Shown here piece by piece: positions 1-20,921 of a stretch of DNA of 64,000 nt. The DNA is from Macrostomum lignano. Its lineage: Eukaryota. Within the stretch, counting starts at the first letter, position 1. Each line of letters begins with the position of its first letter. The DNA is taken from contig NIVC01000974.1 in the NCBI GenBank assembly GCA_002269645.1, forward strand, positions 186,001-250,000, written 5' to 3'. The position numbers and the translations under genes were made by a program. Under the pieces are notes generated by a model. That model ran no database searches. It was given only the letters and a program-made list of their open reading frames with translations, and was not told the DNA's origin.

Positions 1-1108
1 TCGTTCTTCAGTAAGAAGCGGATGGGCACCTGGAAGAAACCGCATAGCAAACGCTGGTGGGAGGTGGGAGGAAGTGTCCGTTTTCTGGTCAATGAGGCCA
101 TCCGCAAACAGTTGTCGCGATCCCGCAATTCTATTCTGGGATCCAGCCAACAAACGGGAAGCCAAGGCCAGGGAGAAAATGTCTTAAGGTCTCCGAGTCA
201 GCTTGAAACAGACTTGGCAGCCAGTCAAGTAACGGCAGACCGACTCGCCAGGACAATGCGGACCATTCTCTCCGCAAGCCATTTGATACTACGAGCAATC
301 AATTTAATACCCTGTGGGACCTGATCTCTGGCCTATCCTCAAATTTTACGTTGTCGAATAATTTTGAATTAGTAAAAGTAAATTTGTAAAAATGTTTCTT
401 CACATCCTTACTACATTCGGAGCAACAACGGATGTTGCAGCGATGAGAATGGTTTCTATTCGACAATAAATGGTAGACTTACGATGACTGCAGCCAATCT
501 ATGAACTTTTCGATACGTTTCTTCTTATCAAATGTTGCGTCATTTCGCTAATTTACACTCCTTTCCTATTTTACCTACGTCATCTCTCTGAAATGACTCT
601 GGGGCGACGCAAGTGACTCAGGGACGCTTCCAGGCCTACGTGCCGTTTTAATCGACTTTACTCATTCCTTAGTTACAGAAACAATTGGATTTCATAAATC
701 GCCAGTCAGGCCTTCGTGTCCGTAGCCAAAGGACCTACCACCCAACAAGACAGTTCAGCACATTCACTGAAGACGACCTGCTCACGAAGTCGTTGACGGG
801 CCTGCGTGGCGGAGAAGTCGCTGGACGCGGTACAATACTTTTTAATATGGATTGTGAAGGAAAATTTACCACTTTCCCAGGTGCAGATTATGCCTTCCCG
901 GGAACAGCAATTGAAGACATCAGTTAAAGGCATGTATTTTACTAAAGGTAAGGATCTCGCGTCAAAAAGTTGAACACCCTGTGTGAGTGCGTGCCTGTAT
1001 GTATATGTGCGTGCTCAGGGGTCAGCGGACTGGGCTGCGAGCCGACTATCGCCTTGACTTACGGCAAAAATAGCAAAGCAGAGAGTTGCAATAGAAATCT
1101 GCACTCAC

Positions 1109-1682
1109 TCCTCCCGGTACTTCTCGGGCAGCAGGAGAACTGGCAGGCCGGGATAAACGTAGGCGATGCACAGCAGCCGCTTTTTCACCTCAGCAGGCAA
1201 ACTCAGCTGCCGCTTTGACGCCGATGCGCTGCACTTTGCCGACTCGACCATGGCGTTGCTGGCGACCCGCAGGCACCGCTTCGAGTCCAAGACGAGCCGA
1301 CCGGACAGCGCCAGGTTGACGGCCACCTCCTCGGCCGAGCTGCGGTCGAACAGGTCCAGCGGAAACGGCTGCTTGTAGAAGATCTCGAAGGATTGGGCCA
1401 AGTGGGCTGGACGCAGAGGCATCGACAGGCGCTCGGCGGCCACGCGCACCAGCTCGACAATCGACTCGACGGCCTCCGCCTGCTTCGCCGAGCGTTCGGC
1501 ATCGCGCTGCCCTTGCAGCTGCAGCTGGCGCTGACGCTCGCGCTCCTCCTCGCGCTTCTGTCTTCGTTGACGTTCGCGCTCCTCGTAGCGCTTGCGCTCG
1601 CGCTGCAGCTGACGCTCAAGCTCCTCCTCGAGCTCCTCGCGCTTCATCTGGCGTTCCTTCTCGCTTATGATTATTTCGTTTG
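1109..1682 (-). CDS. LOTUS-domain gene A (TDRD5/Tejas-like), exon 2: charged coiled coil, LOTUS 2 and start of LOTUS 3; the next exon was not found in 1-1108
   Basis: Acceptor ttttttgtcccatgcAG at 1684-1683 (phase 1, matches exon 1) and donor GTGAGT at 1108 (phase 2). Encodes ESIVELVRVAAERLSMPLRPAHLAQSFEIFYKQPFPL and LPAEVKKRLL...LPEKYRE; nearly identical to an exon of the LOTUS-Tudor gene at 23 kb. Confidence 0.8.
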
Positions 1683-2001
1683 CTGCATGGGACAAAAAAT
1701 TGCACTGCTAGAGCTAATAATTAAATAATAATAAATTAATACCAATAGTTGGTTATTACAAATAGATACGCTCGTAAGAAATAGTCTAACAATTTTATGT
1801 AGACAAAAATTTTAACAATTTCTAATCTTTCATATTTTATTTGCATACATTGGTTGCTCCCATTAGACCGCAACAACGTACGGTTCGCTGGGAGACATTC
1901 TATGGAGTGATGCTTGGCTTGGCTTATAGCCACAGCATAAATACGACGTACGCATTAATTATAAAGTTCTGCTGAAGACACTTAGCAAGTACAAGTTTGG
2001 G

Positions 2002-4094
2002 AGTCACTAAATGTGTCACTAGATGCGTTACTGAATCACTAGATTAGTCACTGAGTGTCACTAGATGCATCACTGGAAGTCACCAGATTAGTCACCGAAT
2101 GTGTCAATAGATGCGTCACTGGAAGTCACTAGATTAGTCACTGACTGTCACTAGATGCGTCACTGAAGTCACCAGATTAGTCACCAAATGTGTCAATAGA
2201 TGCGTCACTGGAAGTCACTAGATTAGTCACTGACTGTCACTAGATGCGTCACTGAAGTCACCAGATTAGTCACTCAACCGAATCGTCACCAGATTAGTCC
2301 GGAGTGTCACTACATGTATATGCATCACTGGAAGTCACCAGATTAGTCACTGAGTGTCGCTAGATGCGTCACTGAAATCACCAGATTAGTCACTGAACTG
2401 ATGTGCCACTAGATGCGTCACTGGAAGTCACCAGATTAGTCACTGAATGTGCCACTAGAAGCGTCACTGGAAGTCACCAGATTAGTCACTGAATGTGCCA
2501 CTAGATGCATCACTAGAAGTCACTAGATTAGTCACTGAACTGAATGTGCCACTAGATGCGTCACTGGAAGTCACCAGATTAGTCACTGAGTGTCACTAGA
2601 TGCGTCACTGAAATCACCAGATTAGTCACTGAACTGAATGTGCCACTAGATGCGTCACTGGAAGTCACCAGATTAGTCACTGAATGTGCCACTAGAAGCG
2701 TCACTGGAAGTCACCAGATTAGTCACTGAATGTGCCACTAGATGCATCACTGGAAGTCACCAGATTAGTCACTGAATGTGCCTCTAGAAGCGTCACTGGA
2801 AGTCACCAGATTAGTCACTGAATGTGCCACTAGATGCATCACTGGAAGTCACCAGATTAGTCACTGAATGTGCCTCTAGAAGCGTCACTGGAAGTCACCA
2901 GATTAGTCACTGAATGTGCCTCTAGAAGCGTCACTGGAAGTCACCAGATTAGTCACTGAATTTGCCACTAGATGCATCACTGGAAGTCACCAGATTAGTC
3001 ACTGAATGTGCCACTAGATGCATCACTGGAAGTCACCAGATTAGTCACTGAATGTGCCTCTAGAAGCGTCACTGGAAGTCACCAGATTAGTCACTGAATT
3101 TGCCACTAGATGCATCACTGGAAGTCACCAGATTAGTCACTGAATTTGCCACTAGATGCATCACTGGAAGTCACCAGATTAGTCACTGAATGTGCCTCTA
3201 GAAGCGTCACTGGAAGTCACCAGATTAGTCACTGAATTTGCCACTAGATGCATCACTGGAAGTCACCAGATTAGTCACTGAATGTGCCACTAGATGCATC
3301 ACTGGAAGTCACCAGATTAGTCACTGAATGTGCCTCTAGAAGCGTCACTGGAAGTCACCAGATTAGTCACTGAATTTGCCACTAGATGCATCACTGGAAG
3401 TCACAAGATTAGTCACTGAATGTGCCACTAGATGCATCACTGGAAGTCACCAGATTAGTCACTGAATGTGCCTCTAGAAGCGTCACTGGAAGTCACCAGA
3501 TTAGTCACTGAATTTGCCACTAGATGCATCACTGGAAGTCACCAGATTAGTCACTGAATGTGCCACTAGATGCATCACTGGAAGTCACCAGATTAGTCAC
3601 TGAATTTGCCACTAGATGCATCACTGGAAGTCACCAGATTAGTCACTGAATTTGCCACTAGATGCATCACTGGAAGTCACCAGATTAGTCACTGAATGTG
3701 CCACTAGATGCATCACTGGAAGTCACCAGATTAGTCACTGAATGTGCCTCTAGAAGCGTCACTGGAAGTCACCAGATTAGTCACTGAATTTGCCACTAGA
3801 TGCATCACTGGAAGTCACCAGATTAGTCACTGAATTTGCCACTAGATGCATCACTGGAAGTCACCAGATTAGTCACTGAATGTGCCACTAGATGCATCAC
3901 TGGAAGTCACCAGATTAGTCACTGAATGTGCCTCTAGAAGCGTCACTGGAAGTCACCAGATTAGTCACTGAATTTGCCACTAGATGCATCACTGGAAGTC
4001 ACCAGATTAGTCACTGAATTTGCCACTAGATGCATCACTGGAAGTCACCAGATTAGTCACTGAATGTGCCACTAGATGCATCACTGGAAGTCAC
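2002..4094. repeat. 46-bp tandem satellite, left arm (about 45 units)
   Basis: Unit gtcaccagattagtcactgaatgtgccactagatgcatcactggaa; period 46 checked (2761 vs 2807); degenerate units at the left edge. Confidence 0.97.
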
Positions 4095-4286
4095 TGTTAA
4101 GTAGGAACAAGCGAGACATTTAGGCACGACAAAACTCTTAAGGCCCAAGTTGGCCAAAGTCAGACTATATATATTGTCAAGTGAAGCGGGTTGAAATATT
4201 GATTCATGCAATGTACAGTGTCGCGTGTACATAGAGCTAGTGTGCATTTTGAATTAAGAAAGAGTTCTAAAACGCGACACACAACA
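4095..4286 (-). repeat. 3' LTR (192 bp)
   Basis: Base-by-base match to 8896-9087; preceded in element orientation by a short purine tract TGGGAGA (4293-4287). Confidence 0.96.
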
Positions 4287-4671
4287 TCTCCCAACGCAAG
4301 AAATAAGTTTGTTAACCGATTACAGTATTAAAGTATTTAGCAAAATCTCCGAACGGAAGCGGAAATAAAAGCAAATTCGAATGGAAGCGGATTTAAAAAA
4401 AACTACAATCTTTGAGTCATGTTGGACTAATAACATTGGCAACATTGATACAAACAATGCACATTAACTTTAATGCAAAGCTCTGGACCGATACAATGCA
4501 ACAATACACTCCTAATCTCTCCACTGTCTAAGAATACAAAGTCGGAAATCAATGCGGAATATAACGCGACCTTACGATTCGCAAGCTCAAACAGTTCTAA
4601 AAAAAAACAGTTCATCAAACTTTAACTCAAATCAGAATCAAGCGTCAACTTATCTTCATCAATACAGCGGC

Positions 4672-7600
4672 TTAACTCGGATGATAGAAAACTGGCGTTT
4701 TGACAACTCGGCCACGCATTGTCCTGTACGGCTCATCTGACTGCTTTGAGGCCGGCTGCACGGAGGCCGGCTGCACGGAGGCCGGCTGCACGGAGGCCGG
4801 CTGCACGGAGGCCGGCTGCACGGAGGCCGGCTGCACGGAGGCCGGCTGCACGGAGGCCGGCTGCACGGAGGCCGGCTGCACGGAGGCCGGCTGCGCAGAG
4901 GCCGGCTGCACGGAGGCCGGCTGCACGGAGGCCGGCTGCACGGAGGCCGGCTGCTCAGCCTCGTCGACATCCTCGCTGTCACAATGGAGAGACTCGCTGA
5001 ATGGCACATCTACCATTCGAGGCCTGATGAAACGGCGATTCCTTCTGAGCAGCTGACCAGTCTCGGTTCGAACCCAGTACGACCTTGGACAATTCTCCAG
5101 CTCGCTGTCGATCTCAGCAGCCACCCAGTCGCGACGACCTCGTTGGAGCCAGACCAGATCACCAGCAGCTAGTCTCCTCAATGGTCGAGCTCCTCGGTTG
5201 TACAACTGCGCTGCCCGAGTGCGCTGCTTCTCAAAGGCCTCTATGCTTGAGTGTAGGTGAATTTCCTTTGGCCGCAAATCTTGAACAGTTGCAGGCAAGT
5301 CGCACCGGAGCTTACGACCGAATGCCATCTCAGCTGGACTCGGAAAGCCGCTGCCGACTGGGGTGTTGCGGTAGTGAAGCAACGCCAGCTCCAGGTTCTG
5401 TCCAGTCTCTGAGCACTTCTTCAGCATATTCTTTGCCGTTTGTACGTAGCGTTCTGCTCTTCCATTTGATTGCGGGTACGTCGGACTTGAAGTTCGGTGC
5501 TCGACCTTGAATTCTGCTATCGTCTGTCGAAATTCCCGAGCGGAAAACTGTGGACCTCCGTCGCTGACGAGTTTCTCTGGCACTCCGAAGTTTTGAAAAT
5601 GGTCCCGAATCACTGAAACGACAGCTGCGCTGGTGGTCGATCTCATTCGAGTGACACTCATCCAGCGACTGTAGGAGTCCACGTACACCAGGTAGGATGA
5701 ACCGCCGAACTCGAACAGGTCTGTGGAGCAATCTTGGAATGGGAAGCTCGGCATGTCCACCGTCATCAGCGTCTCCTTAGACTGGGTTCTCATGTTTCGC
5801 TGACAAGACTCGCAGTCAGTGACGACCTGCTCCACACAGCTCCGCATTCCTGGCCAGTAGAAATAGTCCTTAGCCTTGAGGTGCATTTTCACGATGCCTG
5901 GGTGCCCAGCATGAAGAATTTTGAGCACCTGTTTCCTTGAATCTCCGCTGGGAACATAGATCCGGTCCTTCAAGCACAAAAGTCCGGAAGCATAGGTCAG
6001 GTCATGCCGAACGTCCCAAAACGGCTTCAGGTCGTCTGTCAACCTCGCTCTGTGCTCTGGCCAACCGTCTAGGATGACATTCCGCAACCGCTCGCTCGTC
6101 ATATCTTTGGCTGTTGCATTCTTGATCATGTGCAAGATCTCGCGGTCCCCGCTAAAGCAGCGCTCGACTGATAGGACTTGACCATCGAGGGCTTCTTCTA
6201 GCTGAATTGTGAGGAGATCAGCTGCACCGTGTGCTCGGCTCAATGTGTCGGCTACGTGCAACTCCTTTCCGGGAGTGTACTTGACGCGAATGTCATAAGG
6301 CTGCAACTGGAGCATAAGTCGCTGAATTCGAGGCGTTGTGTCACACAGAGCCTTCTTGAAGATCGCCTCCAACGGCTTGTGGTCGCTCTGGACATGCACT
6401 GTCCGGCCCCAGATGTATCGATGGAACTTTTTGCAGCCATAGACAATAGCAAGAAGCTCTTTCTCGATTTGTGCATATGCTCGCTGGGCACTGGTCATTG
6501 CAGAGGACGCGTATTCGACTGGGCGATGGTCTTGTAGCAGCACTGCGCCAATTCCACTCTTGCTTGCGTCGACTGAAACCGTTACGGGCTTGGCTGTGTC
6601 AAAGGTAGCCAGCACCCGGTTCGAGCACAGATCCGCGATGATTGCATCATACGCCTGGTCGTGCTGATCCAGCCAGCTCCATATGATTTCCTTCTTCAGG
6701 AGATGCCTCAGTGGTTCCGCAGTGGCTGACAGGTGCGGGCAGAATCTTGCCAAGTAGGTGACACAGCCGAGAAAACGCCTCAGTTGCTCTTTCTTTGCGG
6801 TTACGCCTTCCAGAGAGTCGGGTCTTGCTATCTGCTTGATTGCCTTGACCTTCTGCGGATCAGCTCGAATTCCATCAGGGCCCAGAATATCGCCTAAGTA
6901 GTTCAGCTCTGGGGCTCCAACTCGCATCTTGTTCGGATTCAGCGTGACGTTAGCGCGCTTGCACTGCTCCATCAGGCTGCGAACTGCAGTGTCATGTTCC
7001 TCGATGGTGCGCCCCCACACGATAATGTCATCGAAAAAGTTTTTCGAGTTCTTGACGTGACTGGTGACATTCTCCTCCATGCGCTTTTGGAACACTTCGG
7101 GGATCGATGATAAGCCGTACGGCACCCGCTTCCACCTGTAACGGCCGAATGGAGTATGGAACGTAGTGAGGAACGAGCTCTGCTCATCTAGCTTGAGCTG
7201 ATGGAAACTCTCGTTGGCGTCAAATGTGCTGTACACCACGGCTCCAGCAGTCGCCATCCGAACTTCCTCCGCCGTTGGAATCGGGTGATATTCGCGGATG
7301 ATGAACTGGTTCAGGTATGTTGGGTCAAGGCATAGGCGCATCGAGCCGTCCTTCTTCCAGACAATGGTGACGTTTGAAACCCATTGAGTCGGCTCGTCTA
7401 CTCGAACAATTTTCCCATCTCTCTCCAGGCGCTCCAGCTCGCACTTCAAGGGCTGATAGGCCGCGAATGGAACCTTGCGTGGCGGCTGGACTTTTGGAGC
7501 GGCATTTTCTGTTAGCTGAATTGTGTACTGCTGCTTCATGCACCCGACACCTTTGAACACAGTCGGATAGTCTGCTATCAGCTGGCTGCTAGTGATCTGA

Positions 7601-8844
7601 GACTGGTGGGGTTTCTCAACTTTGCTGAGATTGGCTGGGCTCTTGTTTATGGCAAAAAGCTTCCTGATGAGATGCAACTCATGCAGTGCTGACTTCCAAC
7701 CTATGATCGGAGTCGCGTTTTCTCCAACGACTACAAACTGAAGTTTAACGTTTTTCTGACACGGAGACGAAACTGTCAGGTGAGTTAGGCCGACGACATC
7801 CAGCTGCTGTCTGTTGTAGGTAGTGAGTGTCCAGGATGTGGGCTCAATTTCAGCCGCAGGGGCGAACTTGATCAGGCATCGCAGCGGAACAACGTTGACA
7901 TCTGCCCCAGTATCGACCTTAAACTGGAGCATCCGTCCCGAATCCTTCGCCGTGAGATTCACCATCATTGTTGAGTAGTCGTGCAGACGCTGAGCTTCCA
8001 GTTTCTCAACTGTCATGACTGTCGCTGGTTTTGCCTCTTGGTCAGCGTCATCCAGCTGCTGCTTGTCCTCCTGGAGCTCGTTGACTTTCTTTGAGGACCG
8101 GCACATTGACGAGAAGTGGTTCAGACGGCCACAGTTGTTACACTTCCTACCGTAGGCTGGGCATTTTCTCCGCTCGTGCTGCAGTCCGCAGAAGCCACAG
8201 CCGCGGCCTGAAGGCGGTTTTGGTGGGCCAGCTGGTGCTCGGGGTCCACCTTGGACAACATCCACCGTTGACGGCGGAGCTCGGCCGCTCTGAGTTGCCA
8301 GCAGAGCGCTAGCCTGTCGCTTTGACGTCTCCGAAGCCCGTCCCATCTGAATTGCACGGTTGAGTGTCAGGTTGGACTCACGGAGTAGTCTCTCTTTGAG
8401 CGCTGGGTCGCCGACTCCGATCACGATCTGGTCGCGGATGACGCTGTCGCCGACTGACTCGCCGTTGGCTGGTGTCGCGTAGTTGCACCTGGTCACGAGC
8501 TGTCGCAGAGAGGCAACGAACTGATCGAAGTCTTCCGACTCCTTCTGCACTCTGGTTCTGAACAGGTAGCGGTCGAAGGTCTCGTTGCTCATTGGCTCAC
8601 AGTAATTCTTGAATTGATTGAGAACCCCAGCGTATGTCGCCACTTCGGCTGTCGGGAAGGTGGAGAACACGTCTTGTCCTTCTGATCCGAGCGCAGTCAA
8701 CAGTATTGCAATCTTGACCTCTTCGCTCTCCTCCGTTTTCTTGGTTGCCTTCATGTAGAAGTCGATCGCTTTGCTCCATTTTCTCCAGTTATCTGCGCGA
8801 TTGGCATCAAAAACCATCGGCTCTGGAGGCCTCAGTCCTTCCAT
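4672..8844 (-). CDS. Gag-Pol polyprotein, 1390 aa (gag zinc knuckles, protease, RT, RNase H, integrase)
   Basis: CGFCGLQHERRKC and CNNCGRLNHFSSMC knuckles; FKVDTGADV protease; FDANESFHQ and FFDD RT; VDAS...EKELLAI RNase H; HAGH...CESC plus TDLF...SDGGPQF...SNGRAER integrase. Domain order PR-RT-RH-IN is Gypsy type. Confidence 0.97.
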   Translation of the reverse strand: MEGLRPPEPMVFDANRADNWRKWSKAIDFYMKATKKTEESEEVKIAILLTALGSEGQDVFSTFPTAEVATYAGVLNQFKNYCEPMSNETFDRYLFRTRVQKESEDFDQFVASLRQLVTRCNYATPANGESVGDSVIRDQIVIGVGDPALKERLLRESNLTLNRAIQMGRASETSKRQASALLATQSGRAPPSTVDVVQGGPRAPAGPPKPPSGRGCGFCGLQHERRKCPAYGRKCNNCGRLNHFSSMCRSSKKVNELQEDKQQLDDADQEAKPATVMTVEKLEAQRLHDYSTMMVNLTAKDSGRMLQFKVDTGADVNVVPLRCLIKFAPAAEIEPTSWTLTTYNRQQLDVVGLTHLTVSSPCQKNVKLQFVVVGENATPIIGWKSALHELHLIRKLFAINKSPANLSKVEKPHQSQITSSQLIADYPTVFKGVGCMKQQYTIQLTENAAPKVQPPRKVPFAAYQPLKCELERLERDGKIVRVDEPTQWVSNVTIVWKKDGSMRLCLDPTYLNQFIIREYHPIPTAEEVRMATAGAVVYSTFDANESFHQLKLDEQSSFLTTFHTPFGRYRWKRVPYGLSSIPEVFQKRMEENVTSHVKNSKNFFDDIIVWGRTIEEHDTAVRSLMEQCKRANVTLNPNKMRVGAPELNYLGDILGPDGIRADPQKVKAIKQIARPDSLEGVTAKKEQLRRFLGCVTYLARFCPHLSATAEPLRHLLKKEIIWSWLDQHDQAYDAIIADLCSNRVLATFDTAKPVTVSVDASKSGIGAVLLQDHRPVEYASSAMTSAQRAYAQIEKELLAIVYGCKKFHRYIWGRTVHVQSDHKPLEAIFKKALCDTTPRIQRLMLQLQPYDIRVKYTPGKELHVADTLSRAHGAADLLTIQLEEALDGQVLSVERCFSGDREILHMIKNATAKDMTSERLRNVILDGWPEHRARLTDDLKPFWDVRHDLTYASGLLCLKDRIYVPSGDSRKQVLKILHAGHPGIVKMHLKAKDYFYWPGMRSCVEQVVTDCESCQRNMRTQSKETLMTVDMPSFPFQDCSTDLFEFGGSSYLVYVDSYSRWMSVTRMRSTTSAAVVSVIRDHFQNFGVPEKLVSDGGPQFSAREFRQTIAEFKVEHRTSSPTYPQSNGRAERYVQTAKNMLKKCSETGQNLELALLHYRNTPVGSGFPSPAEMAFGRKLRCDLPATVQDLRPKEIHLHSSIEAFEKQRTRAAQLYNRGARPLRRLAAGDLVWLQRGRRDWVAAEIDSELENCPRSYWVRTETGQLLRRNRRFIRPRMVDVPFSESLHCDSEDVDEAEQPASVQPASVQPASVQPASAQPASVQPASVQPASVQPASVQPASVQPASVQPASVQPASVQPASVQPASKQSDEPYRTMRGRVVKTPVFYHPS
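4748..4954 (-). repeat. 15-bp coding minisatellite, 14 copies of QPAS(V), in the integrase C-terminal tail
   Basis: gaggccggctgcacg repeated in frame within the pol ORF. Confidence 0.95.
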
Positions 8845-8881
8845 TAGCTAGCTTGCTTGGCTATTGGGGGAAAGTACTTTA

Positions 8882-8895
8882 TGCTTGCGACGCCA
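8882..8895 (-). other. Primer-binding site TGGCGTCGCAAGCA, possibly for a tRNA-Ser
   Basis: Abuts the 5' LTR and starts with TGG (complement of tRNA CCA). The implied G discriminator base fits Ser; tRNA identity is inference. Confidence 0.7.
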
Positions 8896-9087
8896 TGTTA
8901 AGTAGGAACAAGCGAGACATTTAGGCACGACAAAACTCTTAAGGCCCAAGTTGGCCAAAGTCAGACTATATATATTGTCAAGTGAAGCGGGTTGAAATAT
9001 TGATTCATGCAATGTACAGTGTCGCGTGTACATAGAGCTAGTGTGCATTTTGAATTAAGAAAGAGTTCTAAAACGCGACACACAACA
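8896..9087 (-). repeat. 5' LTR (192 bp)
   Basis: Identical to 4095-4286; contains TATATATA. Confidence 0.96.
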
Positions 9088-10171
9088 GTCACCAGATTAG
9101 TCACTGAATGTGCCTCTAGAAGCGTCACTGGAAGTCACCAGATTAGTCACTGAATGTGCCACTAGAAGCGTCACTGGAAGTCACCAGATTAGTCACTGAA
9201 TGTGCCTCTAGAAGCGTCACTGGAAGTCACCAGATTAGTCACTGAATGTGCCTCTAGAAGCGTCATTGGAAGTCACCAGATTAGTCACTGAATGTGCCAC
9301 TAGATGCATCACTGGAAGTCACCAGATTAGTCACTGAATGTGCCTCTAGAAGCGTCACTGGAAGTCACCAGATTAGTCACTGAATTTGCCACTAGATGCA
9401 TCACTGGAAGTCACCAGATTAGTCACTGAATTTGCCACTAGATGCATCACTGGAAGTCACCAGATTAGTCACTGAATGTGCCTCTAGAAGCGTCACTGGA
9501 AGTCACCAGATTAGTCACTGAATGTGCCACTAGATGCGTCACTGGAAGTCACCAGATTAGTCACTGAATGTGCCACTAGAAGCGTCACTGGAAGTCACCA
9601 GATTAGTCACTGAATGTGCCTCTAGAAGCGTCACTGGAAGTCACCAGATTAGTCACTGAATGTGCCTCTAGAAGCGTCACTGGAAGTCACCAGATTAGTC
9701 ACTGAATGTGCCACTAGATGCATCACTGGAAGTCACCAGATTAGTCACTGAATGTGCCTCTAGAAGCGTTACTGGAAGTCACCAGATTAGTCACTGAATT
9801 TGCCACTAGATGCATCACTGGAAGTCACCAGATTAGTCACTGAATTTGCCACTAGATGCATCACTGGAAGTCACCAGATTAGTCACTGAATGTGCCTCTA
9901 GAAGCGTCACTGGAAGTCACCAGATTAGTCACTGAATGTGCCACTAGATGCATCACTGGAAGTCACCAGATTAGTCACTGAATGTGCCACTAGATGCGTC
10001 ACTCGAAGTCACTGAATGTGCCACTAGATGCATCACTAGAAGTCACCAGATTAGTCACTGAATGTGCCACTAGATGCGTCACTCGAAGTCACCAGATTAG
10101 TCACTGAATGTGCCACTAGATGCGTCACTCGAAGTCACTAGATTAGTCACTTAACCGAATCGTCACCAGAT
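9088..10171. repeat. 46-bp tandem satellite, right arm (about 23 units)
   Basis: Same unit as 2002-4094; resumes in register after the TSD. Confidence 0.97.
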
Positions 10172-10210
10172 GCAGCAACTAACTGCTTCACAGTACAATA
10201 CGCCGCTTAC

Positions 10211-10439
10211 GGTTAGTGAGGACCAGTCGGACGCAGGACTCTCCTTGCCATTCGTACACCTGCATGCCGTCAATGGAGTCTAGCAAGTCTTCCAATGATT
10301 TAAAATTAAACTGTTGCCATCGCAACGGACCAACGCAGCGAGCGTACTCGCTGGCAAGGGCCGCGCAAGTGATATTTTGCTGGCGCTTTAAATTTGGAAC
10401 GCGCATGCATAGGCGCAGATTGACGGCCACCTGCTCCAT
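10211..10439 (-). CDS. LOTUS-domain gene A, exon 1 (N-terminal LOTUS/OST-HTH domain)
   Basis: ATG at 10439; LASEYARCVGPLRWQQFNFKSLEDLLDSIDGMQV fits the LOTUS pattern (L..eY...g.l......F.sLedLL.sipgv). Donor GTAAGC at 10210 is phase 1 and joins in frame to 1682. Confidence 0.8.
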
Positions 10440-11122
10440 CTTAGCGGCTCTGCTGAAAAAAGCAGATCATTTTACTGTTTCTACGTGATTTCGAACTATG
10501 AGCAATCTTAGACAAATTTTGTCTATCGAACCCAGCCAGTGCTAAATTTACTTGAGTACTCGTATCTTTTATTAAAAAATAAAATTTAATAAATTTTAAA
10601 GTGGGTGGTTTTGAACTATTAAAACAGACAGTGCTTACTAATCTGCGTATATTTCAAATTGAACAAATGTTTCAAAAGACTACTGCTCTGCTATAAAAGA
10701 ATATTTATATATAAATATCACAGTCGTTTAGAAGGTGGAGAAGCACTGCAGACTTGGAAGGTGATGCAGTCACATGATGCGCAACGGAGTAAAGTACATT
10801 TTACTAAGGCGAATAGGCACAATATCTAAAATCCAAGTCCGTTTAAAGATAAAGGAACAAGACACTGCGGAGTTCAAGTGGATGCATCTTGCGAGTATAA
10901 AAGTTCGCCTACTGAAGAGTAGCAAAGAACTTTGAACGTGTGTGTCTAGTCGCAAAAATGCGGCGCTTATCTACTCTTTTCAGTAGCAGCTTAGGGTTTT
11001 TTGCCTTTTAATAAGTAGTAAAAGTAAATATTATTCTCAATTTTACAATTATTTTGTTTTTGAAGCTGCAACAATCGCCTTTGGCCTTCTACGAGTACAA
11101 GCAGATAAACTTGGTCTCATTT

Positions 11123-11801: not shown

Positions 11802-14077
11802 CTACTCGTCCTTCGAGCTCAAATCCTCAACCAGAAGGCGCACCAGCCGTTTCAGCTCGGCCAGCCGCTCAGGCGGAGTCTCCGGCAGCAGGCCGGCGCC
11901 TACGTTGCACACGTAGCGCTTGGCGCCGAAAGAGCGCAACATCCGTCTGACGTGATCGCGCAGCACCTCGCTGGGCGCATAGGCCAGCAGGGCCGGGTCG
12001 AGGTTGCCCTGGACGGCAACTCCTGCCGCGGCGGCCACCCGACGGCAGTGCTCCGGCCGCATCGTGTGGTCAACGCCCAGCACGTCGAAGCCGCTACAGG
12101 CGAGCTCCTCCAGAACGCTGTGGCAGGAGGGAGCAAACAAAATCAGCGGCACGCCTGGTCCAATCCGGGCGCGAACCTCCGACGCCAGCCGGCGCAGTCT
12201 GGGCAACGCGAACTGGCAGAACAGGTTTGGCGACAGGCGGCCCGCCAGCGGCTCAACCACCTGCAGAGCCTGCGGCATGGGATAGCGCGACATTGCCATG
12301 AAGCACGATTGCCCATCCGCCCAGTCCCATCTCTGCCTAGTCCCATCTGCCTAATCCCATCTGCTCAGTTCCATCTGCCTAATCCCATCTGCTCAGTTCC
12401 ATCTGCCTAATCCCATCTGCTCAGTTCCATCTGCCTAATCACATCTACTTAGTCCCATCCGCCTAATCCCATCTGCTCAGTTCCATCTGCCTAATCACAC
12501 CTGCCTAGTCCCAACTTCTTAATCACATCTGCCTAATCCCATCTGCTCAGTTCCATCTGCCCAATCCCATCTACTTAGTCCCATCCGCCTAATCCCATCT
12601 GCTCAGTTCCATCTGCCTAATCACATCTGCCTAGTCCCAACTTCCTAATCACATCTGCCTAGTCCCATCTACTCAATCCCATCTGCCTAATCCCATCTGC
12701 TCAGTTCCATCTGCCTAATCACATCTGCCTAGTCCCAACTTCCTAATCACATCTGCCTAATCCCATCTGCCTAGTCCCATCTACTCAATCCCATCTGCCT
12801 AATCCCATCTGCCTAATCCCATCTGCTCAGTTCCATCTGCCCAATCCCATCGACTTAGTCCCATCCGCCTAATCCCATCTACTCAGTCCTATCTGCCTAA
12901 TCCCATCTACTCAGTCCTATCTGCCTAATCCCATCTACTCAGTCCTATCTGCTAAGTCCCATCTGCACGACTGCACCATTCATTGAATTCATCCAGTGTA
13001 AAATATGAATAGCATGCTTGGGCGCAACCTAGGGATTCACCCGGCCGTTTCTATTGGCAACACACACATGTAAGTCGCTATTGGACGGAATAGTAATCAC
13101 GTGACTCTCAGCCAATGGCGACTTACATGTGTGTGTTGCCAATAGAAACGGCCGAGTGATTTCCAAGGTTGCGCATGTATGATGAATAGCCTGAGTTACC
13201 CAGTCCTCCACAATCGGTGAGAATCCACAGTAACCCATTCACTTTACATGTAATTCACCATTATCCATTTAGCTTCCAGCCGCTTTACCTGAGCTCCGGC
13301 AGCCACCTGATCAACTAGAAAGTCAACCAGCAGGCCAGTCAGCTTGTCTAAGAGCCTCTCGCACGCTTCTGGCTGACTGTAGAGCCACCCGACGGCCAGC
13401 CCGGGGTCGCCAGCCATGCGAGCCAGCAGCGTCCATGGCGCTCCAGCCAGGCCCAGCAGGACGGCGCGGCCCATTAGCCTACGCCTGGCCAGATTAAGCG
13501 CCTCCAGTACGCAGTGCAGCCGGCCACGAGCGGCCCCAAATTCCAGCGCCAATGCCGCTCTGTCTGCCGGGCCGGTCAGCGGCTCCGACACAATCAGACC
13601 GGCGCGTTGATTGACACCGCCGACGCTTTGCTTAGCAACTAATCCCAAAGCTATTGGTACCAGTATGATGTCTGTGAAGATTGGCGCCGCGTCAAGTTCG
13701 CAACGAGTCAAGGGTAGAACAGTCAGCTCGCTGGCCAGCTCAGGATTTCGGCACAGCTCGGCGTGACCGTGGTGCGCCAGCAGCTGCCGGTATTCGGGCA
13801 GGTGCGGCCCGGCCTGGCGCAACAGCCACAAGGGGACGCGCAGGCCAGTTGCGGGTTCGCCGAAAACGGCGCGCAACAGGATGTCGTTAAGCAGAGGCGG
13901 CAGATCCCCGAAATCGACGACAAAGTCGGCCGAGACGGCTTGGACGCGATTGAAGCCGGACAGACCTTGCTGCTGCTTTTTCTTGTTCCTCTGCTGCTCA
14001 GGCAATGGCTGAGTCCGCCACAGTTGCGATCGAGCCGACTGGCCCGCACTGGAGCTGGGATTCGGCAGGGACAGCAT
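11802..14077 (-). CDS. UROD: Uroporphyrinogen decarboxylase-family protein, divergent active site; exons 14077-13289 and 12269-11802 (418 aa)
   Basis: LNDILLRA, WLLRQAG, LDAAPIFTDI, GLAGAPWTL, QVAAGAQ|ALQV, QGNLDP, RYVCNVGAG are collinear with UROD/HemE. Donor GTAAAG at 13288, acceptor CAG at 12272-12270, phase 0. Confidence 0.9.
12326..12966. repeat. 14-bp tandem array (cccatctgcctaat / cccatctgctcagt) in the UROD intron
   Basis: Alternating 14-bp variants visible directly. Confidence 0.92.
13042..13154. other. Near-perfect inverted repeat (43-bp arms, 27-nt loop) in the UROD intron
   Basis: cggccgtttctattggcaacacacacatgtaagtcgctattgg ... ccaatggcgacttacatgtgtgtgttgccaatagaaacggccg, 1 mismatch. 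Confidence 0.9.
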
Positions 14078-14255
14078 GAAGGCAGCAGGTCATTGAACCA
14101 ATTTCTACTCTAAACTAAGCTAGCCCACTGACACAGCAAACCTATTGAATGTTGCTAGCAGCGTGGCTAGAGGTGTACCTACATACGAGCTCGTAAGTAT
14201 ACCACAATGAGGCAAAGACATACATACTCAGAGACGAAACATATTTAGGGACACA

Positions 14256-17200: not shown

Positions 17201-18392
17201 AGCATACATACACAGAGACCGGAGACACAGCATATATACACAGAGACCGGAGACACAGCAGTATACATAACCAGAGACCGGAGACACAGCATACATGCCC
17301 AGAGACCGGAGACACAGCATACATGCCCAGAGACCGGAGACACAGCAAACATGCCCAGAGACCGGAGACACAGCATACATACACAGAGACCGGAGACACA
17401 GCATACATACACAGAGACCGGAGACACAGCATACATACACAGAGACCGGAGACACAGCATACATACACAGAGACCGGAGACACAGCATACATACACAGAG
17501 ACCGGAGACACAGCATATATACACAGAGACCGGAGACACAGCATACATGCCCAGAGACCGGAGACACAGCATACATGCCCAGAGACCGGAGACACAGCAA
17601 ACATGCCCAGAGACCGGAGACACAGCATACATACACAGAGACCGGAGACACAGCATACATACACAGAGACCGGAGACACAGCATACATACACAGAGACCG
17701 GAGACACAGCATACATACACAGAGACCGGAGACACAGCATACATACACAGAGACCGGAGACACAGCATACATACACAGAGACCGGAGACACAGCATATAT
17801 ACACAGAGACCGGAGACACAGCATATATACACAGAGACCGGAGACACAGCATACATACACAGAGACCGGAGACACAGCATATATACACAGAGACCGGAGA
17901 CACAGCATATATACACAGAGACCGGAGACACAGCATACATGCCCAGAGACCGGAGACACAGCATACATGCCCAGAGACCGGAGACACAGCATACATGCCC
18001 AGAGACCGGAGACACAGCATACATGCCCAGAGACCGGAGACACAGCATACATGCCCAGAGACCGGAGACACAGCATACATGCCCAGAGACCGGAGACACA
18101 GCATACATACACAGAGACCGGAGACACAGCATACATACACAGAGACCGGAGACACAGCATACATACACAGAGACCGGAGACACAGCATACATACACAGAG
18201 ACCGGAGACACAGCATACATACACAGAGACCGGAGACACAGCATACATGCCCAGAGACCGGAGACACAGCATACATGCCCAGAGACCGGAGACACAGCAT
18301 ATATACACAGAGACCGGAGACACAGCATACATGCCCAGAGACCGGAGACACAGCATACATACACAGAGACCGGAGACACAGCATACATATAC
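14256..18392. repeat. 28-bp satellite (about 147 units) with higher-order blocks
   Basis: Unit gcatacatgcccagagaccggagacaca; rare variants recur at 728 bp (15241/15969) and 532 bp (15969/16501). Confidence 0.98.
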
Positions 18393-18878: not shown

Positions 18879-20019
18879 TTATTGCTGCCACCAATAATCC
18901 ATCTGATAGATAGAAGCGCCTTGAAAGTTATAAGCATGTTGCTGCTGTAATTGCTGTTGCTGCTGCTGCTGCGGTTGTAAGGCGCCAGTAGACCAGTTGG
19001 CCGGCCAGACTGGCGGCGGCTGAGGCGCGGCCGGCATAAGCGGCCGGACGAACGCCGTCGAGATGCCCATTGCGCCTCTAGAATGGAGCGGCTGTGGCTG
19101 CTGGTGCATAAACAAATGCGGCGGAAACGGCGGCTGTGGTGGAAACGGCGACTGCGGAGGAAACGGCGACTGCGGAGGAAACGGCGACTGCGGCATGAAG
19201 CCTGGCGTGTTTGACGGCCAATTCATCAGTGATGGCGGCGGGCCCATCGGCGGGCCGGCAGAGGACGCGGCGGAACTTTCTGCGGACTGCGAATGCGATT
19301 GCATTGGCAGCAAGGGACGCAGTGGACGAGGCGAAGGTAAAGCAACGATTCGCTGTTGCTCATCCAGCTGCCGCTGCTCTTCATCCAGCTGCCGCTGCTC
19401 TTCATCACGCTGCCGCTGCTCATTAATCTGTTTCGCCGCGAATCGAGGAGGCACAGTGGGAGCAAAGAATGACACAGCGTTTGGATCCAGCGCAGCGGAG
19501 ACAGAGTGCTCTGCAAAGTTAATGATGGGTTGAAACGGCATCGAAGTTTGATTAATATTATTTATCCTTCATATATATATTAATGTATACATGTAAATAA
19601 TATAAAAAACAAACTACATAAACCAACAAAAAGCAGAGAAAACAGAAAGAAACAGGTGTGAGTATGTGCGCAAGCGAGTGAGAAGCTGCTAAACTAGGAG
19701 TAGACGTTGGGGCGAGGCATTGGAACTCACTCTGCTGAGTCTGACAGGGCAAGTCAGACTCGCTGCTGCTGCTGGCATCGGAGCCCTGCTCAGGTTCTTC
19801 CAAGCAGAACAGCTGCAGCTGAACTGAGCAGCGAGTCAGCCTGGCCCTGGCTGAGCTGAGCAGCCCGCTGCAGGCCGGCTGTCGCACCGAGGCCAAATCG
19901 GCTCGGATGCCGGCCAGGGCGCCGGCCGCGAGGGAGACCCTCTGGCGGATGCTGAGTCTGGACTTCTTCATCTGAGCGTCGCTCCGTCTCATGGAATCGC
20001 GATTTGCCGCTGCAAGCAT
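18879..20019 (-). CDS. Uncharacterised protein with PAM2-like motif and P/Q-rich tail; exons 20019-19731 and 19510-18879 (about 306 aa; 5' end uncertain)
   Basis: GC3-rich frames; donor GTGAGT at 19730 and acceptor ttgCAG at 19513-19511 are both phase 1; SAALDPNAVSFFAP resembles PAM2 (LNPNAxxFxP). Confidence 0.65.
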
Positions 20020-20277
20020 TTTTGCAGATTTTACTAAATATGATTTCAGATTACCTTTTTTTCTCCGACTCTTTTGTTGTACCTGCCGCCATAGCCAGGG
20101 GATTTGAATAAAAAGCGAAGGGATTTGGGAATGTTATTTCACAGAAAAATAACGCCAATCTAGGATCAAAAAAGAAACTAAATATACAGATAAATAAAAT
20201 ACATTGCTAGCTGTTTTTCTTAGAACTAAGCCGACCCGACGCAAGAGCGCATTTCAGACTCTTAATCTCTGACTCTG

Positions 20278-20467
20278 CCCCTCTTGTAAATATATTATCG
20301 ATCGGCCCTCAGTTCAACCCCTCTTGTAAATATATTATCGATCGGCCCTCAGTTCAACCCCTCTTGTAAGTTTATTATCGATCGGCCCTCAGTTCAACCC
20401 CTCCTGAACATTTATTATCGATCGGCTCTCAGTTCAACCCCTCCTGTACATTTTTTATCGATCGCCC
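20278..20467. repeat. 40-bp tandem repeat, about 5 copies
   Basis: cccctcttgtaaatatattatcgatcggccctcagttcaa recurring every 40 bp (20281, 20321, 20361, 20401, 20441). Confidence 0.9.
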
Positions 20468-20921
20468 CAAAAAGTCAATCCAACCACACTGGTTCAACCT
20501 TCTTTATCGTTCCATCCACTGGATTTGCCTAGCTCAACTTATCCTCCCTATCTTTGCGACTCTCATTTCGATTGATAATCAGATTTTTATCATAAACTAC
20601 CTGTACTTTCGGCATTGTGCCCATCTGACATCTCCTGTCCTAACCTAAACTAAGTTGCCCTGTTCATATTCATTTCCACTAGTAATAACATATATTTCAT
20701 GAGACTGGTTGAAGTCCAAAGCATAGTCAATTAGATTTAGTCATAAGCACTCCGAAGGTGAGCAGTACCATACTGCATCAAGCTTAACTATGTATTAGGA
20801 ACAAAAACTCCCCTTCCCGTTTGGGAACTTGGAACTCACGAATTCCAATTAAAAACAAACACACACAAACAACAAGACAAAGAACATGCAATGTTGCATA
20901 CTAGAAAGTGTAAAGCTTAAA

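What the first reader, a model, noticed from the sequence alone, without database searches (positions are those of the whole stretch)
1109..10439. Probable piRNA-pathway gene carries an intact, sense-oriented retrotransposon in an 8.5-kb satellite intron
Seen: exon 1 (LOTUS) and exon 2 join in frame across an intron made mostly of 46-bp satellite and a complete Gypsy element on the same strand. Known: LOTUS+Tudor proteins (TDRD5/TDRD7, Tejas/Tapas) act with Vasa in germ-granule transposon silencing. Inference: every pre-mRNA of this gene would contain the element, so silencing the element could down-regulate the silencer, or the LTR could truncate the transcript to a LOTUS-only product. The intron seems to separate the LOTUS core from a following helix (NEIIISEKERQMKR) that may be the eLOTUS extension.
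Basis: partly seen in the sequence, partly recalled or inferred. Interest (0 to 1): 0.7.

Follow-up and report, generated by a model that had tools for sequence, protein, structure and literature searches.

The report
Young retrotransposon in flatworm Tudor-gene intron
One of three genomic copies of a flatworm (Macrostomum lignano) LOTUS-like/Tudor gene recently gained an intact retrotransposon in its repeat-filled first intron; in this repeat-rich genome that is an ordinary event, and nothing shows a special regulatory role.

Summary
Exon 1 (10439-10211, minus strand) and exon 2 (1682-1109) join in frame across a canonical GT-AG intron of 8,528 bp. The intron is 58.5% one LTR retrotransposon and about 33% 46-bp minisatellite. 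The element (4095-9087, same strand) has identical 192-bp LTRs, a 5-bp target duplication, PBS, PPT and one 1,390-aa gag-pol ORF in Ty3/gypsy order, with no env.

The window is Macrostomum lignano, NIVC01000974.1:186001-250000, not an insect. Two other assembled copies of the locus carry the same exons and the same intronic minisatellite, with introns of 1,850 and 500 bp and no element. The insertion is therefore recent and specific to one copy. A 5'-truncated tandem paralogue also lies in the window.

The LOTUS call for exon 1 is only partly supported: OST-HTH is the sole Pfam hit (E 0.001, 19.4 bits) but falls below the 23.8-bit cut-off. No homologues were found and the structure models were poor. 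An extended Tudor exon follows in another copy and in the paralogue.

The silencer-feedback idea has no support here, and TE-free copies buffer any effect. LTR elements make up 21% of this genome and tandem repeats 15%, so the arrangement is ordinary.

The parts
10211..10439 (-). Exon 1 of gene A (first coding exon, 76 codons + 1 nt). It encodes a LOTUS/OST-HTH-like domain.
   Evidence: ATG at 10439 and donor GTAAGC at 10210. Pfam OST-HTH E 0.001, 19.4 bits, below the 23.8 cut-off. 98.3-98.7% identical in two other copies, with 3 synonymous changes and one Ile/Val change. The deposited CDS starts at 10343 in this frame.
10453..10461 (-). Candidate 3' splice or trans-splice acceptor (TTTTTTCAG), 13 nt upstream of the ATG. 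An in-frame TGA lies at 10469-10467.
   Evidence: Read from the sequence. [quoted passage not shown] Its use here is inferred.
1683..10210 (-). Intron 1 (8,528 bp, GT-AG, phase 1).
   Evidence: The same intron is 1,850 bp in L007 and 500 bp in L008.
9088..10151 (.). 46-bp minisatellite, on the exon-1 side of the insertion.
   Evidence: Tandem Repeats Finder: period 46, 23.4 copies, 93% matches.
9088..9092 (.). Target-site duplication GTCAC (copy beside the 5' LTR).
8896..9087 (-). 5' LTR of the element (192 nt, TG..CA ends, TATATATA box, no AATAAA/ATTAAA, no GAAnnTTC).
8883..8895 (-). Primer-binding site TGGCGTCGCAAGC, directly after the 5' LTR.
   Evidence: The matching tRNA was not identified, and the window holds no tRNA gene.
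4672..8844 (-). Single gag-pol ORF of 1,390 aa. Features: CX2CX4HX4C knuckle (aa 236-249), protease DTGA (aa 311), RT (aa 497-651, active site FFDD), RNase H (aa 724-850), integrase (aa 968-1124).
   Evidence: Pfam hits and motifs. There are no internal stop codons.
4748..4954 (-). 15-nt tandem repeat inside the ORF, encoding about 14 copies of VQPAS near the integrase C-terminus.
4287..4295 (-). Polypurine tract (..GTTGGGAGA), directly before the 3' LTR.
4095..4286 (-). 3' LTR, 100% identical to the 5' LTR.
4090..4094 (.). Target-site duplication GTCAC (copy beside the 3' LTR).
2002..4094 (.). 46-bp minisatellite on the exon-2 side (2320-4094), with a degenerate tail at 2002-2319.
   Evidence: Tandem Repeats Finder: period 46, 38.4 copies, 92% matches. 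blastn extent.
1109..1682 (-). Exon 2. It encodes an 85-aa Glu/Arg-rich helix, a second LOTUS-like repeat, and the first half of a third repeat that is split by intron 2.
   Evidence: 99.65% identical in L007 and 95.1% in L008. Its 3' ~450 nt are 98.7% identical to paralogue B.
1103..1108 (-). Donor of intron 2 (GTGAGT). If it is not used, the frame stops at TGA 1107-1105. Exon 3 (Tudor) lies beyond the window start.
   Evidence: The same donor in paralogue B is needed to reach the deposited 868-aa product. The Tudor exon of gene A is seen in L008 at 21121-22053. Nothing like it lies in window 1-1100.
19558..23571 (-). Paralogue B, a 5'-truncated tandem duplicate that lacks exon 1 and carries the extended Tudor exon at 22816-21895.

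Best explanation
The window is Macrostomum lignano (assembly Mlig_3_7), contig NIVC01000974.1:186001-250000. Gene A encodes a protein of about 1,083 aa. Its order is an N-terminal LOTUS-like domain, a long charged helix, two further LOTUS-like repeats, and one extended Tudor domain. This is the TDRD5/Tejas-type architecture.

The gene is present in all three subgenome copies of this neopolyploid genome. It also has a 5'-truncated tandem paralogue (B). Its first intron holds a length-variable 46-bp minisatellite in every copy, roughly 0.25, 1.4 and 2.8 kb.

In this copy only, a 4,993-bp env-less Ty3/gypsy LTR retrotransposon integrated into that minisatellite. It lies in the same orientation as the gene and duplicated 5 bp of target. 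The insertion happened after the subgenomes diverged, because the LTRs are still identical. These points are shown.

The following is inferred. Exons, reading frame and all splice signals are intact, so the enlarged intron is most likely still removed. The insertion is probably neutral or mildly lowers output from this one copy. Two element-free copies and the paralogue would buffer any loss. It is best read as an ordinary young insertion in a genome that is 21% LTR retrotransposon and 15% tandem repeat, not as an evolved regulatory device.
For: Identity of the locus:
- An exact protein look-up places the window's CFAP96 gene on three contigs of GCA_002269645.1.
- L009 from NIVC01000974.1 is the exact reverse complement of window 3244-24053.
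- The assembly is M. lignano (protein names).

Element anatomy.

Empty sites:
- L007 and L008 contain exon 1, the first 59 intron bases, the satellite, the 3' intron and exon 2. They have no hit to the LTR or to any internal piece of the element.
- Joining the window's two flanks restores the satellite unit.

Age: there are 0 differences in 2 x 192 nt of LTR. Subgenome SNP divergence is 1.9-2.4% (PMC10733133).

Gene reality:
- Exons are 95-99.7% identical between copies, while the upstream flank is 77% identical to L008.
- Exon 1 changes are 3 synonymous to 1 conservative.
- Deposited transcript-derived models are 1051, 1116 and 1082 aa. The lengths agree: 1051 + 32 missing codons = 1083, and L008's 1082 = 1083 + 3 - 4. 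So the same exon structure is annotated on the element-bearing and element-free copies.

Domains.

Genome context:
- 3,077 LTR-retrotransposon copies, of which 1,928 are full length (bioRxiv 10.1101/2024.12.18.629116).
- LTR elements make up 21% of the genome and tandem repeats 15% (PMC5730564).
- The neighbouring UROD gene also has a satellite in its intron.
Against: - No copy-specific expression data were available. The deposited models come from transcripts mapped by BLAT at a minimum identity of 0.8 with near-best hits kept. The model on this contig may therefore be a transcript of another copy. Its 5' end (10343) lies just 3' of the three copy-specific base differences, which fits cross-mapping.
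- A full-length sense-oriented LTR element is the configuration that most often disturbs host transcripts in other animals (my own knowledge of mouse IAP/ETn alleles). 'Neutral' is therefore an assumption.
- The rest of this copy, from exon 3 onward, is outside the window and was not checked for damage.
- The LOTUS assignment rests on a sub-threshold profile hit.
Confidence: 0.75

Rival explanations
1. The insertion has effectively disabled this copy. Transcripts end or are mis-spliced inside the sense-oriented element or the satellite, or the copy is silenced as heterochromatin. The result would be at most an 83-aa LOTUS-only peptide (exon 1 plus 7 read-through codons) or nothing. The copy would then be on its way to becoming a pseudogene.
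For: - The element is sense-oriented and full length with a TATA-bearing LTR.
- Each satellite unit on the sense strand carries donor-like GGTGAC and acceptor-like TTCCAG strings (read).
- The intron is about 6 times the genome's mean intron length of 1.1-1.4 kb.
- Unspliced read-through of exon 1 stops after 83 aa.
- The deposited model on this contig is 5'-partial and starts just past the copy-specific differences, as expected if no transcript truly comes from this copy.
Against: - Exons 1 and 2 and all splice sites are intact, and the changes are mostly synonymous.
- The LTR has no canonical poly(A) signal in sense. The only ATTAAA in the element is at 4474.
- The insertion is too young for decay to be visible, so intact exons say little either way.
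Confidence: 0.2
2. One reading: the element makes this silencing gene a sensor. Small RNAs or chromatin silencing aimed at the element also lower the host gene, or the LTR produces a truncated LOTUS-only or exon-1-less isoform. This would create feedback between transposon silencing and the silencer.
For: - The gene has the LOTUS-like plus extended Tudor architecture of germ-granule piRNA factors.
- The element is in sense, so nascent transcripts of this copy contain it.
- The 3' LTR carries a TATA box that could drive an exon-1-less, B-like isoform. This last point is conjecture.
Against: - Only one of three copies carries the element, and a paralogue exists. The organism's supply of the protein therefore does not depend on this copy.
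- The insertion is very young (identical LTRs) and shows no sign of conservation or selection.
- About 1,900 full-length LTR elements are scattered through a mostly genic genome. A hit in one of many Tudor-gene copies is expected by chance.
- No small-RNA, chromatin or expression data were available.
Confidence: 0.05
3. Exon 1 does not encode a LOTUS domain. It is a lineage-specific N-terminal extension of a Tudor protein, whose role in the piRNA pathway is unproven.
For: - The OST-HTH score of 17-19 bits is below the 23.8-bit cut-off and covers only profile positions 21-61 of 71.
- phmmer found nothing in 1.84 billion proteins and nothing in the PDB.
- The AlphaFold single-sequence model has pLDDT 63.6, and its fold matches are meaningless.
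- Residues 2-14 of exon 1 resemble the end of the second repeat rather than a first helix.
- Pfam does not call the second or third repeat as LOTUS.
Against: - OST-HTH is the only family hit. Its library-wide E of 0.001 corresponds to about 4e-8 for that one model.
- Ten shuffled or reversed controls gave E of 0.013 or worse, and none hit OST-HTH.
- The position at the N-terminus of a Tudor protein is where TDRD5/7 carry their eLOTUS domain (PMC5458760).
- The predicted secondary-structure order of the second repeat (H-H-H-E-E) fits a winged helix.
Confidence: 0.2
4. The element-in-satellite arrangement is an assembly artefact of a repeat-rich polyploid genome.
For: 36% of the Mlig_3_7 assembly length lies in scaffolds that are chimeric between subgenomes, and copy-number errors are reported (PMC10733133).
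Against: Both junctions are base-perfect. There is a 5-bp duplication, TG..CA ends and an exactly restored satellite phase. A mis-join would not produce this.
Confidence: 0.03

Closest known systems
TDRD5/Tejas and TDRD7/Tapas (LOTUS + extended Tudor germ-granule proteins)
   Same: An N-terminal LOTUS-like domain is followed by further LOTUS-like repeats and an extended Tudor domain. Some TDRD5/7 proteins have an N-terminal eLOTUS plus additional mLOTUS domains (PMC5458760). A single Tudor domain, as here, is the TDRD5/Tejas pattern (PMC12147562).
   Different: No sequence-level orthology could be shown. The LOTUS score is below Pfam's cut-off. An 85-aa Glu/Arg-rich helix separates the first and second repeats. 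The Tudor exon of this very copy lies outside the window. Function, Vasa binding and expression are untested.
M. lignano Ty3/gypsy LTR retrotransposons (Mag, CsRN1 and Gmr1 clades; 455 lineages)
   Same: It is a 5-kb element with short LTRs and the order gag-PR-RT-RH-IN. The genome holds 1,928 full-length copies, mostly of the Mag clade (bioRxiv 10.1101/2024.12.18.629116).
   Different: The lineage was not identified. The LTR has no canonical heat-shock element, so it is not one of the heat-induced lineages as defined there. Integrase follows RT, which to my knowledge excludes Gmr1. The gag knuckle is CCHC, which to my knowledge differs from the CHCC of CsRN1. Mag is therefore the likely clade, but no phylogeny was made. 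The RT motif is FFDD, and a VQPAS repeat sits at the C-terminus.
Sense-oriented intronic LTR-element insertions that disturb host transcripts (mouse IAP/ETn alleles; my own knowledge)
   Same: A full-length LTR element lies in sense orientation in an intron of a protein-coding gene.
   Different: No aberrant transcript is shown here. The LTR lacks a canonical poly(A) signal. The host has two element-free copies.
Transposon-in-silencing-gene sensors in plants (IBM1 intronic heterochromatin, ROS1 promoter element; my own knowledge)
   Same: A repeat or transposon sits inside a gene of a silencing pathway.
   Different: Those elements are conserved and functionally tested. This insertion is young, present in one of three copies, and untested.

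Membership tests
LOTUS / OST-HTH domain (Pfam PF12872) | Significant match to the family profile | tested here: inconclusive
   It is the only Pfam hit of exon 1: E 0.001 and 19.4 bits on the domain alone, 17.2 bits on the 268-aa protein. The curated cut-off is 23.8 bits. Residues 23-61 match profile positions 21-61 of 71. Ten shuffled or reversed controls gave E of 0.013 or worse, none to OST-HTH.
LOTUS / OST-HTH domain (Pfam PF12872) | Winged helix-turn-helix fold | tested here: inconclusive
   The single-sequence AlphaFold2 model of exon 1 has pLDDT 63.6 and pTM 0.44. Foldseek against the PDB gave nothing at E of 0.001 or better and no LOTUS structure. The second repeat scored pLDDT 41.8, though its helix-helix-helix-strand-strand order is compatible.
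eLOTUS subclass (Oskar, TDRD5, TDRD7) | C-terminal extension (alpha5) after the core that contacts the Vasa C-terminal domain (PMC5458760) | not testable with these tools
   NEIIISEKERQMKR follows the core across the splice junction and opens an 85-aa charged helix.
TDRD5/TDRD7-type protein | LOTUS and extended Tudor domains in one polypeptide | tested here: inconclusive
   Within the window, gene A shows only exons 1-2. Its Tudor exon is seen in the homeologous copy at L008 21121-22053, 97% identical in protein to paralogue B's exon 3. B scores Pfam TUDOR 36-37 bits against a 23-bit cut-off and matches the TDRKH extended Tudor at E 2e-7. The feature is met for the gene family. For this copy it is unseen, and the LOTUS half is sub-threshold.
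TDRD5/TDRD7-type protein | Recognisable orthology to TDRD5/7 by sequence | tested here: not met
   The word-indexed searches with the spliced protein and with the repeat-plus-Tudor region found nothing at E of 0.001 or better. phmmer with exon 1 against 1.84 billion representatives found nothing.
TDRD5/TDRD7-type protein | Germline or stem-cell expression and a role in piRNA-mediated transposon silencing | not testable with these tools
   No expression or small-RNA data were available.
Ty3/gypsy LTR retrotransposon (Metaviridae) | Direct LTRs ending TG..CA, flanked by a short target-site duplication | tested here: met
   The LTRs are 192 nt and 100% identical, running TGT...ACA, with a 5-bp GTCAC duplication.
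Ty3/gypsy LTR retrotransposon (Metaviridae) | Primer-binding site after the 5' LTR and polypurine tract before the 3' LTR | tested here: met
   TGGCGTCGCAAGC abuts the 5' LTR, and ..GGGAGA abuts the 3' LTR. The primer tRNA was not identified.
Ty3/gypsy LTR retrotransposon (Metaviridae) | Pol domain order protease - RT - RNase H - integrase | tested here: met
   DTGA at aa 311, RVT_1 at aa 497-651, RNase H at aa 724-850, and integrase zinc finger plus core at aa 968-1124.
Errantivirus (Drosophila gypsy proper) | Third ORF encoding an envelope protein | tested here: not met
   The only long sense ORF is gag-pol. 385 nt separate its stop codon from the 3' LTR.

The most novel reading that the evidence does not exclude
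The sense-oriented, transcription-competent element in intron 1 couples this gene copy to transposon silencing. Silencing directed at the element on nascent RNA lowers output of the only paralogue form that carries the N-terminal, Vasa-recruiting LOTUS domain. Alternatively, the 3' LTR drives an exon-1-less isoform. Either way, the worm would have a dosage sensor for its own transposon defence.
Probability: 0.05. Interest if true: 0.65.

Novelty: new member of a known kind. Interest (0 to 1): 0.25.

Why it matters
The value is mostly as a worked example.
- It fixes the organism: M. lignano, not an insect.
- It gives a gene model for an uncharacterised LOTUS-like/Tudor gene family in a regeneration and stem-cell model animal.
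- It provides a natural three-way comparison of the same gene: with a young sense-oriented LTR element, without it, and with a 0.25-2.8 kb range of intronic minisatellite.

Three copy-specific bases in exon 1 make allele-specific read counting possible. Public RNA-seq could therefore measure directly what a 5-kb sense insertion costs a host gene in this animal.

If the feedback idea were true it would be notable. The present evidence makes it unlikely.

Tried and rejected
- **Homologue searches found nothing.** This covers the spliced 268-aa protein, the repeat-plus-Tudor region, and exon 1 by phmmer against 1.84 billion representatives. No alignment-based profile or deep structure model was therefore possible.
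- **PDB sequence searches** with exon 1 and with the second repeat gave only chance hits.
- **Single-sequence AlphaFold2** of exon 1 and of the second repeat gave low confidence. Foldseek on the exon-1 model returned eIF4E and other meaningless matches.
- **MAFFT alignment of the three LOTUS-like repeats** was not sensible, so no internal-repeat profile was built.
- **Exact look-ups failed** for the UROD ORF, the exon-1 ORF, the DHHC ORF and the element's ORF. The locus was finally reached through the deposited UROD proteins.
- **A Drosophila origin was my first assumption.** I rejected it once the contig was identified.
- **An exon 3 inside window 1-1100** was rejected, because tblastn found nothing there.
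- **A heat-shock element or canonical poly(A) signal in the LTR** was not found.

Full report
**What is at the coordinates**

On the minus strand an ATG at 10439 opens a 229-nt exon that ends AAC|GTAAGC (donor at 10210). A second exon begins after TTTTTTGTCCCATGCAG| at 1682 and runs to 1109, where a consensus donor GA|GTGAGT follows. The two exons join in phase 1 and read ...CVRLVLTN-P-NEIIISEKERQMKR... without a stop codon.

The intron between them is 8,528 bp. It consists of:
- 59 bp of unique sequence;
- 1,064 bp of a 46-bp minisatellite;
- a 4,993-bp LTR element (58.5% of the intron);
- 1,775 bp more of the same minisatellite;
- 318 bp of degenerate repeat;
- 319 bp of unique sequence.

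**The element**

- It has 192-nt LTRs (4095-4286 and 8896-9087) that are 100% identical and end TG..CA.
- It is flanked by a 5-bp duplication, GTCAC. Removing the element and one GTCAC restores the satellite unit exactly, so it inserted into an existing array.
- On the minus strand, the 5' LTR is followed by a primer-binding site (TGGCGTCGCAAGC). The 3' LTR is preceded by a purine tract.
- One uninterrupted 1,390-aa ORF (8844..4672) encodes a CX2CX4HX4C knuckle, protease DTGA, RT, RNase H and integrase, in that order. This is the Ty3/gypsy order. There is no env ORF, so it is not a gypsy-type errantivirus.
- Two oddities: the RT catalytic motif reads FFDD rather than YxDD, and the C-terminus carries about 14 tandem VQPAS units from a 15-nt repeat.
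- In sense orientation the LTR has a TATATATA box. It has no AATAAA or ATTAAA and no GAAnnTTC heat-shock element.
- The element lies on the same strand as the gene.

I analysed it only in pieces and did not print or assemble it.

**Where the window comes from**

The window's single-exon CFAP96 gene is found, residue for residue, on three contigs of GCA_002269645.1. That assembly is Macrostomum lignano Mlig_3_7 (protein names). Locus L009 from NIVC01000974.1 is the exact reverse complement of window 3244-24053, so the window is NIVC01000974.1:186001-250000.

The genome is neopolyploid, with three assembled subgenome copies (S, L1, L2) that differ by about 2% in SNPs and far more in long insertions (PMC10733133). 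LTR retrotransposons make up 21% of it and simple and tandem repeats 15% (PMC5730564). It holds 3,077 LTR-element copies, of which 1,928 are full length, mostly Ty3/gypsy of the Mag clade (bioRxiv 10.1101/2024.12.18.629116).

The window itself is strewn with minisatellites. The neighbouring UROD gene also has a satellite in its intron.

**The other two copies are empty sites**

I reached the homeologous loci through the deposited UROD proteins.

| Feature | L007 (NIVC01002274.1) | L008 (NIVC01002050.1) |
|---|---|---|
| Exon 1 identity to window | 98.7% | 98.25% |
| First 59 intron bases | 100% | 98.3% |
| 46-bp satellite | about 1.4 kb | about 0.25 kb |
| Exon 2 identity to window | 99.65% | 95.1% (one 12-nt deletion) |
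| Intron 1 length | 1,850 bp | 500 bp |

Neither locus has any match to the LTR or to internal pieces of the element. So the minisatellite is a length-variable resident of this intron, and the element is present in one of three copies.

The LTRs show no differences, whereas copies differ by about 2%. The insertion therefore post-dates subgenome divergence.

**Is it a real gene, and what kind?**

Evidence that exon 1 is coding:
- The copies differ in exon 1 by three synonymous changes and one Ile/Val change, and the ATG and donor are kept.
- The upstream flank is only 77% identical to L008, against 98% for the exon.
- The deposited, transcript-derived gene models start in or next to exon 1, in the same frame, on all three contigs. 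Their products are 1051, 1116 and 1082 aa.
- The lengths agree. 1051 plus the 32 missing N-terminal codons is 1083, and L008's 1082 equals 1083 + 3 - 4 given its start and its deletion. The same exon structure is thus annotated with and without the element.
- These models come from transcripts mapped with tolerant settings. They support the exon 1-exon 2 junction for the gene, but not for this copy specifically.

Evidence on the protein type:
- Exon 2 ends inside a third LOTUS-like repeat. Its continuation is not in window 1-1100.
- In L008 an exon 97% identical to the paralogue's Tudor exon lies 5.8 kb downstream.
- The paralogue's exon scores Pfam TUDOR at 36-37 bits and matches the extended Tudor domain of TDRKH in the PDB at E 2e-7. 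No second Tudor domain was found.
- The architecture is therefore a LOTUS-like N-terminus, a charged helix, two more repeats and one extended Tudor domain. This is the TDRD5/Tejas pattern (PMC5458760, PMC12147562).

**The LOTUS claim itself**

- OST-HTH is the only Pfam family that exon 1 hits. The score is 19.4 bits (E 0.001) against a cut-off of 23.8, over profile positions 21-61 of 71.
- Ten shuffled or reversed controls never hit OST-HTH, and their best chance hit to any family was E 0.013.
- No homologue was found in 1.84 billion proteins and none in the PDB.
- The single-sequence structure models were too weak to judge.

I rate the LOTUS identity at about 0.8. What can be said is that the core is followed at once by an 85-aa Glu/Arg-rich helix.

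**A paralogue in the same window**

At 23571..19558 (minus strand) lies gene B, deposited as 868 aa.
- Its homology to A starts inside the Glu/Arg-rich part of exon 2. It is 98.7% over about 450 nt and stops 9 nt after the donor.
- It resumes 17 nt before exon 3.
- B has its own start and lacks exon 1.
- A search over GT-AG chains reaches exactly 868 aa only when the shared exon-2 donor is used. This supports the donor at 1108 in gene A.

B is a 5'-truncated tandem duplicate, so the LOTUS-like exon 1 is unique to gene A.

**How it most likely works**

Shown: a young, structurally intact, sense-oriented Ty3/gypsy element sits inside a variable minisatellite in intron 1 of one of three copies of a LOTUS-like/Tudor gene.

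Inferred:
- Exons and splice signals are intact, so the intron is probably still removed.
- Any loss from premature termination or silencing would affect one copy out of three, and the element-free copies would buffer it.
- An unspliced or truncated transcript would encode 83 aa, that is exon 1 plus 7 codons.

The insertion is not conserved, the genome carries about 1,900 such elements, and the LTR lacks a canonical poly(A) signal.

**Verdict**

The arrangement is a new member of known kinds: an intronic LTR-element insertion, and a TDRD5-like gene. Its main use is as a natural with/without comparison that can be read out with copy-specific exon-1 variants.

Noticed in passing
window 19558-23571 (minus strand): Gene B is a 5'-truncated tandem duplicate of gene A. 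Its exon 2 (3' part) and exon 3 are 98-99% identical to A's. Between them, intron 2 is unrelated except for 9 nt after the donor and 17 nt before the acceptor (195 nt in B, over 5.8 kb in A). B lacks the LOTUS-like exon 1.
   Followed up: partly
window 11805-14068 (minus strand): The UROD gene has two exons (14068..13289 and 12272..11805) with a 28-bp satellite (12312-12966) in its intron. It is deposited as a truncated 269-aa product on this contig, against 415 aa on the other two contigs.
   Followed up: partly
window 14249-18388: A 4.1-kb array of a 28-bp satellite (148 copies, 97% matches) lies just upstream of UROD. It produces spurious ORFs of about 1,400 aa in several frames. Many more minisatellites (periods 11-56) fill the rest of the window.
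   Followed up: no
window 4672-8844 (minus strand), aa 603-606 and about 1300-1370: The element's RT active site reads FFDD instead of the usual YxDD. The integrase C-terminus carries about 14 tandem VQPAS units encoded by a 15-nt repeat (4748-4954).
   Followed up: partly
window 10373, 10383, 10386 (CDS nt 67, 57, 54): The element-bearing copy differs from both other copies at three clustered exon-1 positions (A/C/G here, G/T/A in the others, listed in order of window coordinate). The deposited CDS on this contig starts at 10343, just 3' of them. This would fit a transcript of another copy having been mapped here.
   Followed up: partly
window 10453-10461 (minus strand): TTTTTTCAG lies 13 nt upstream of the exon-1 ATG, with an in-frame TGA 15 nt further up. 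It could be an SL trans-splice acceptor, which is common in this species.
   Followed up: no
L007 18636-20069 (antisense to gene A): A LINE-like reverse-transcriptase ORF of 477 aa sits in intron 2 of the homeologous copy. Intron 2 of gene A is therefore also large and loaded with transposons.
   Followed up: no
window 10400-10436 versus 1213-1332: Residues 2-14 of exon 1 (EQVAVNLRLCMRV) resemble the end of the second LOTUS-like repeat (EEVAVNLALSGRLVLDSKRCLRV). This hints that exon 1 arose by internal duplication.
   Followed up: partly
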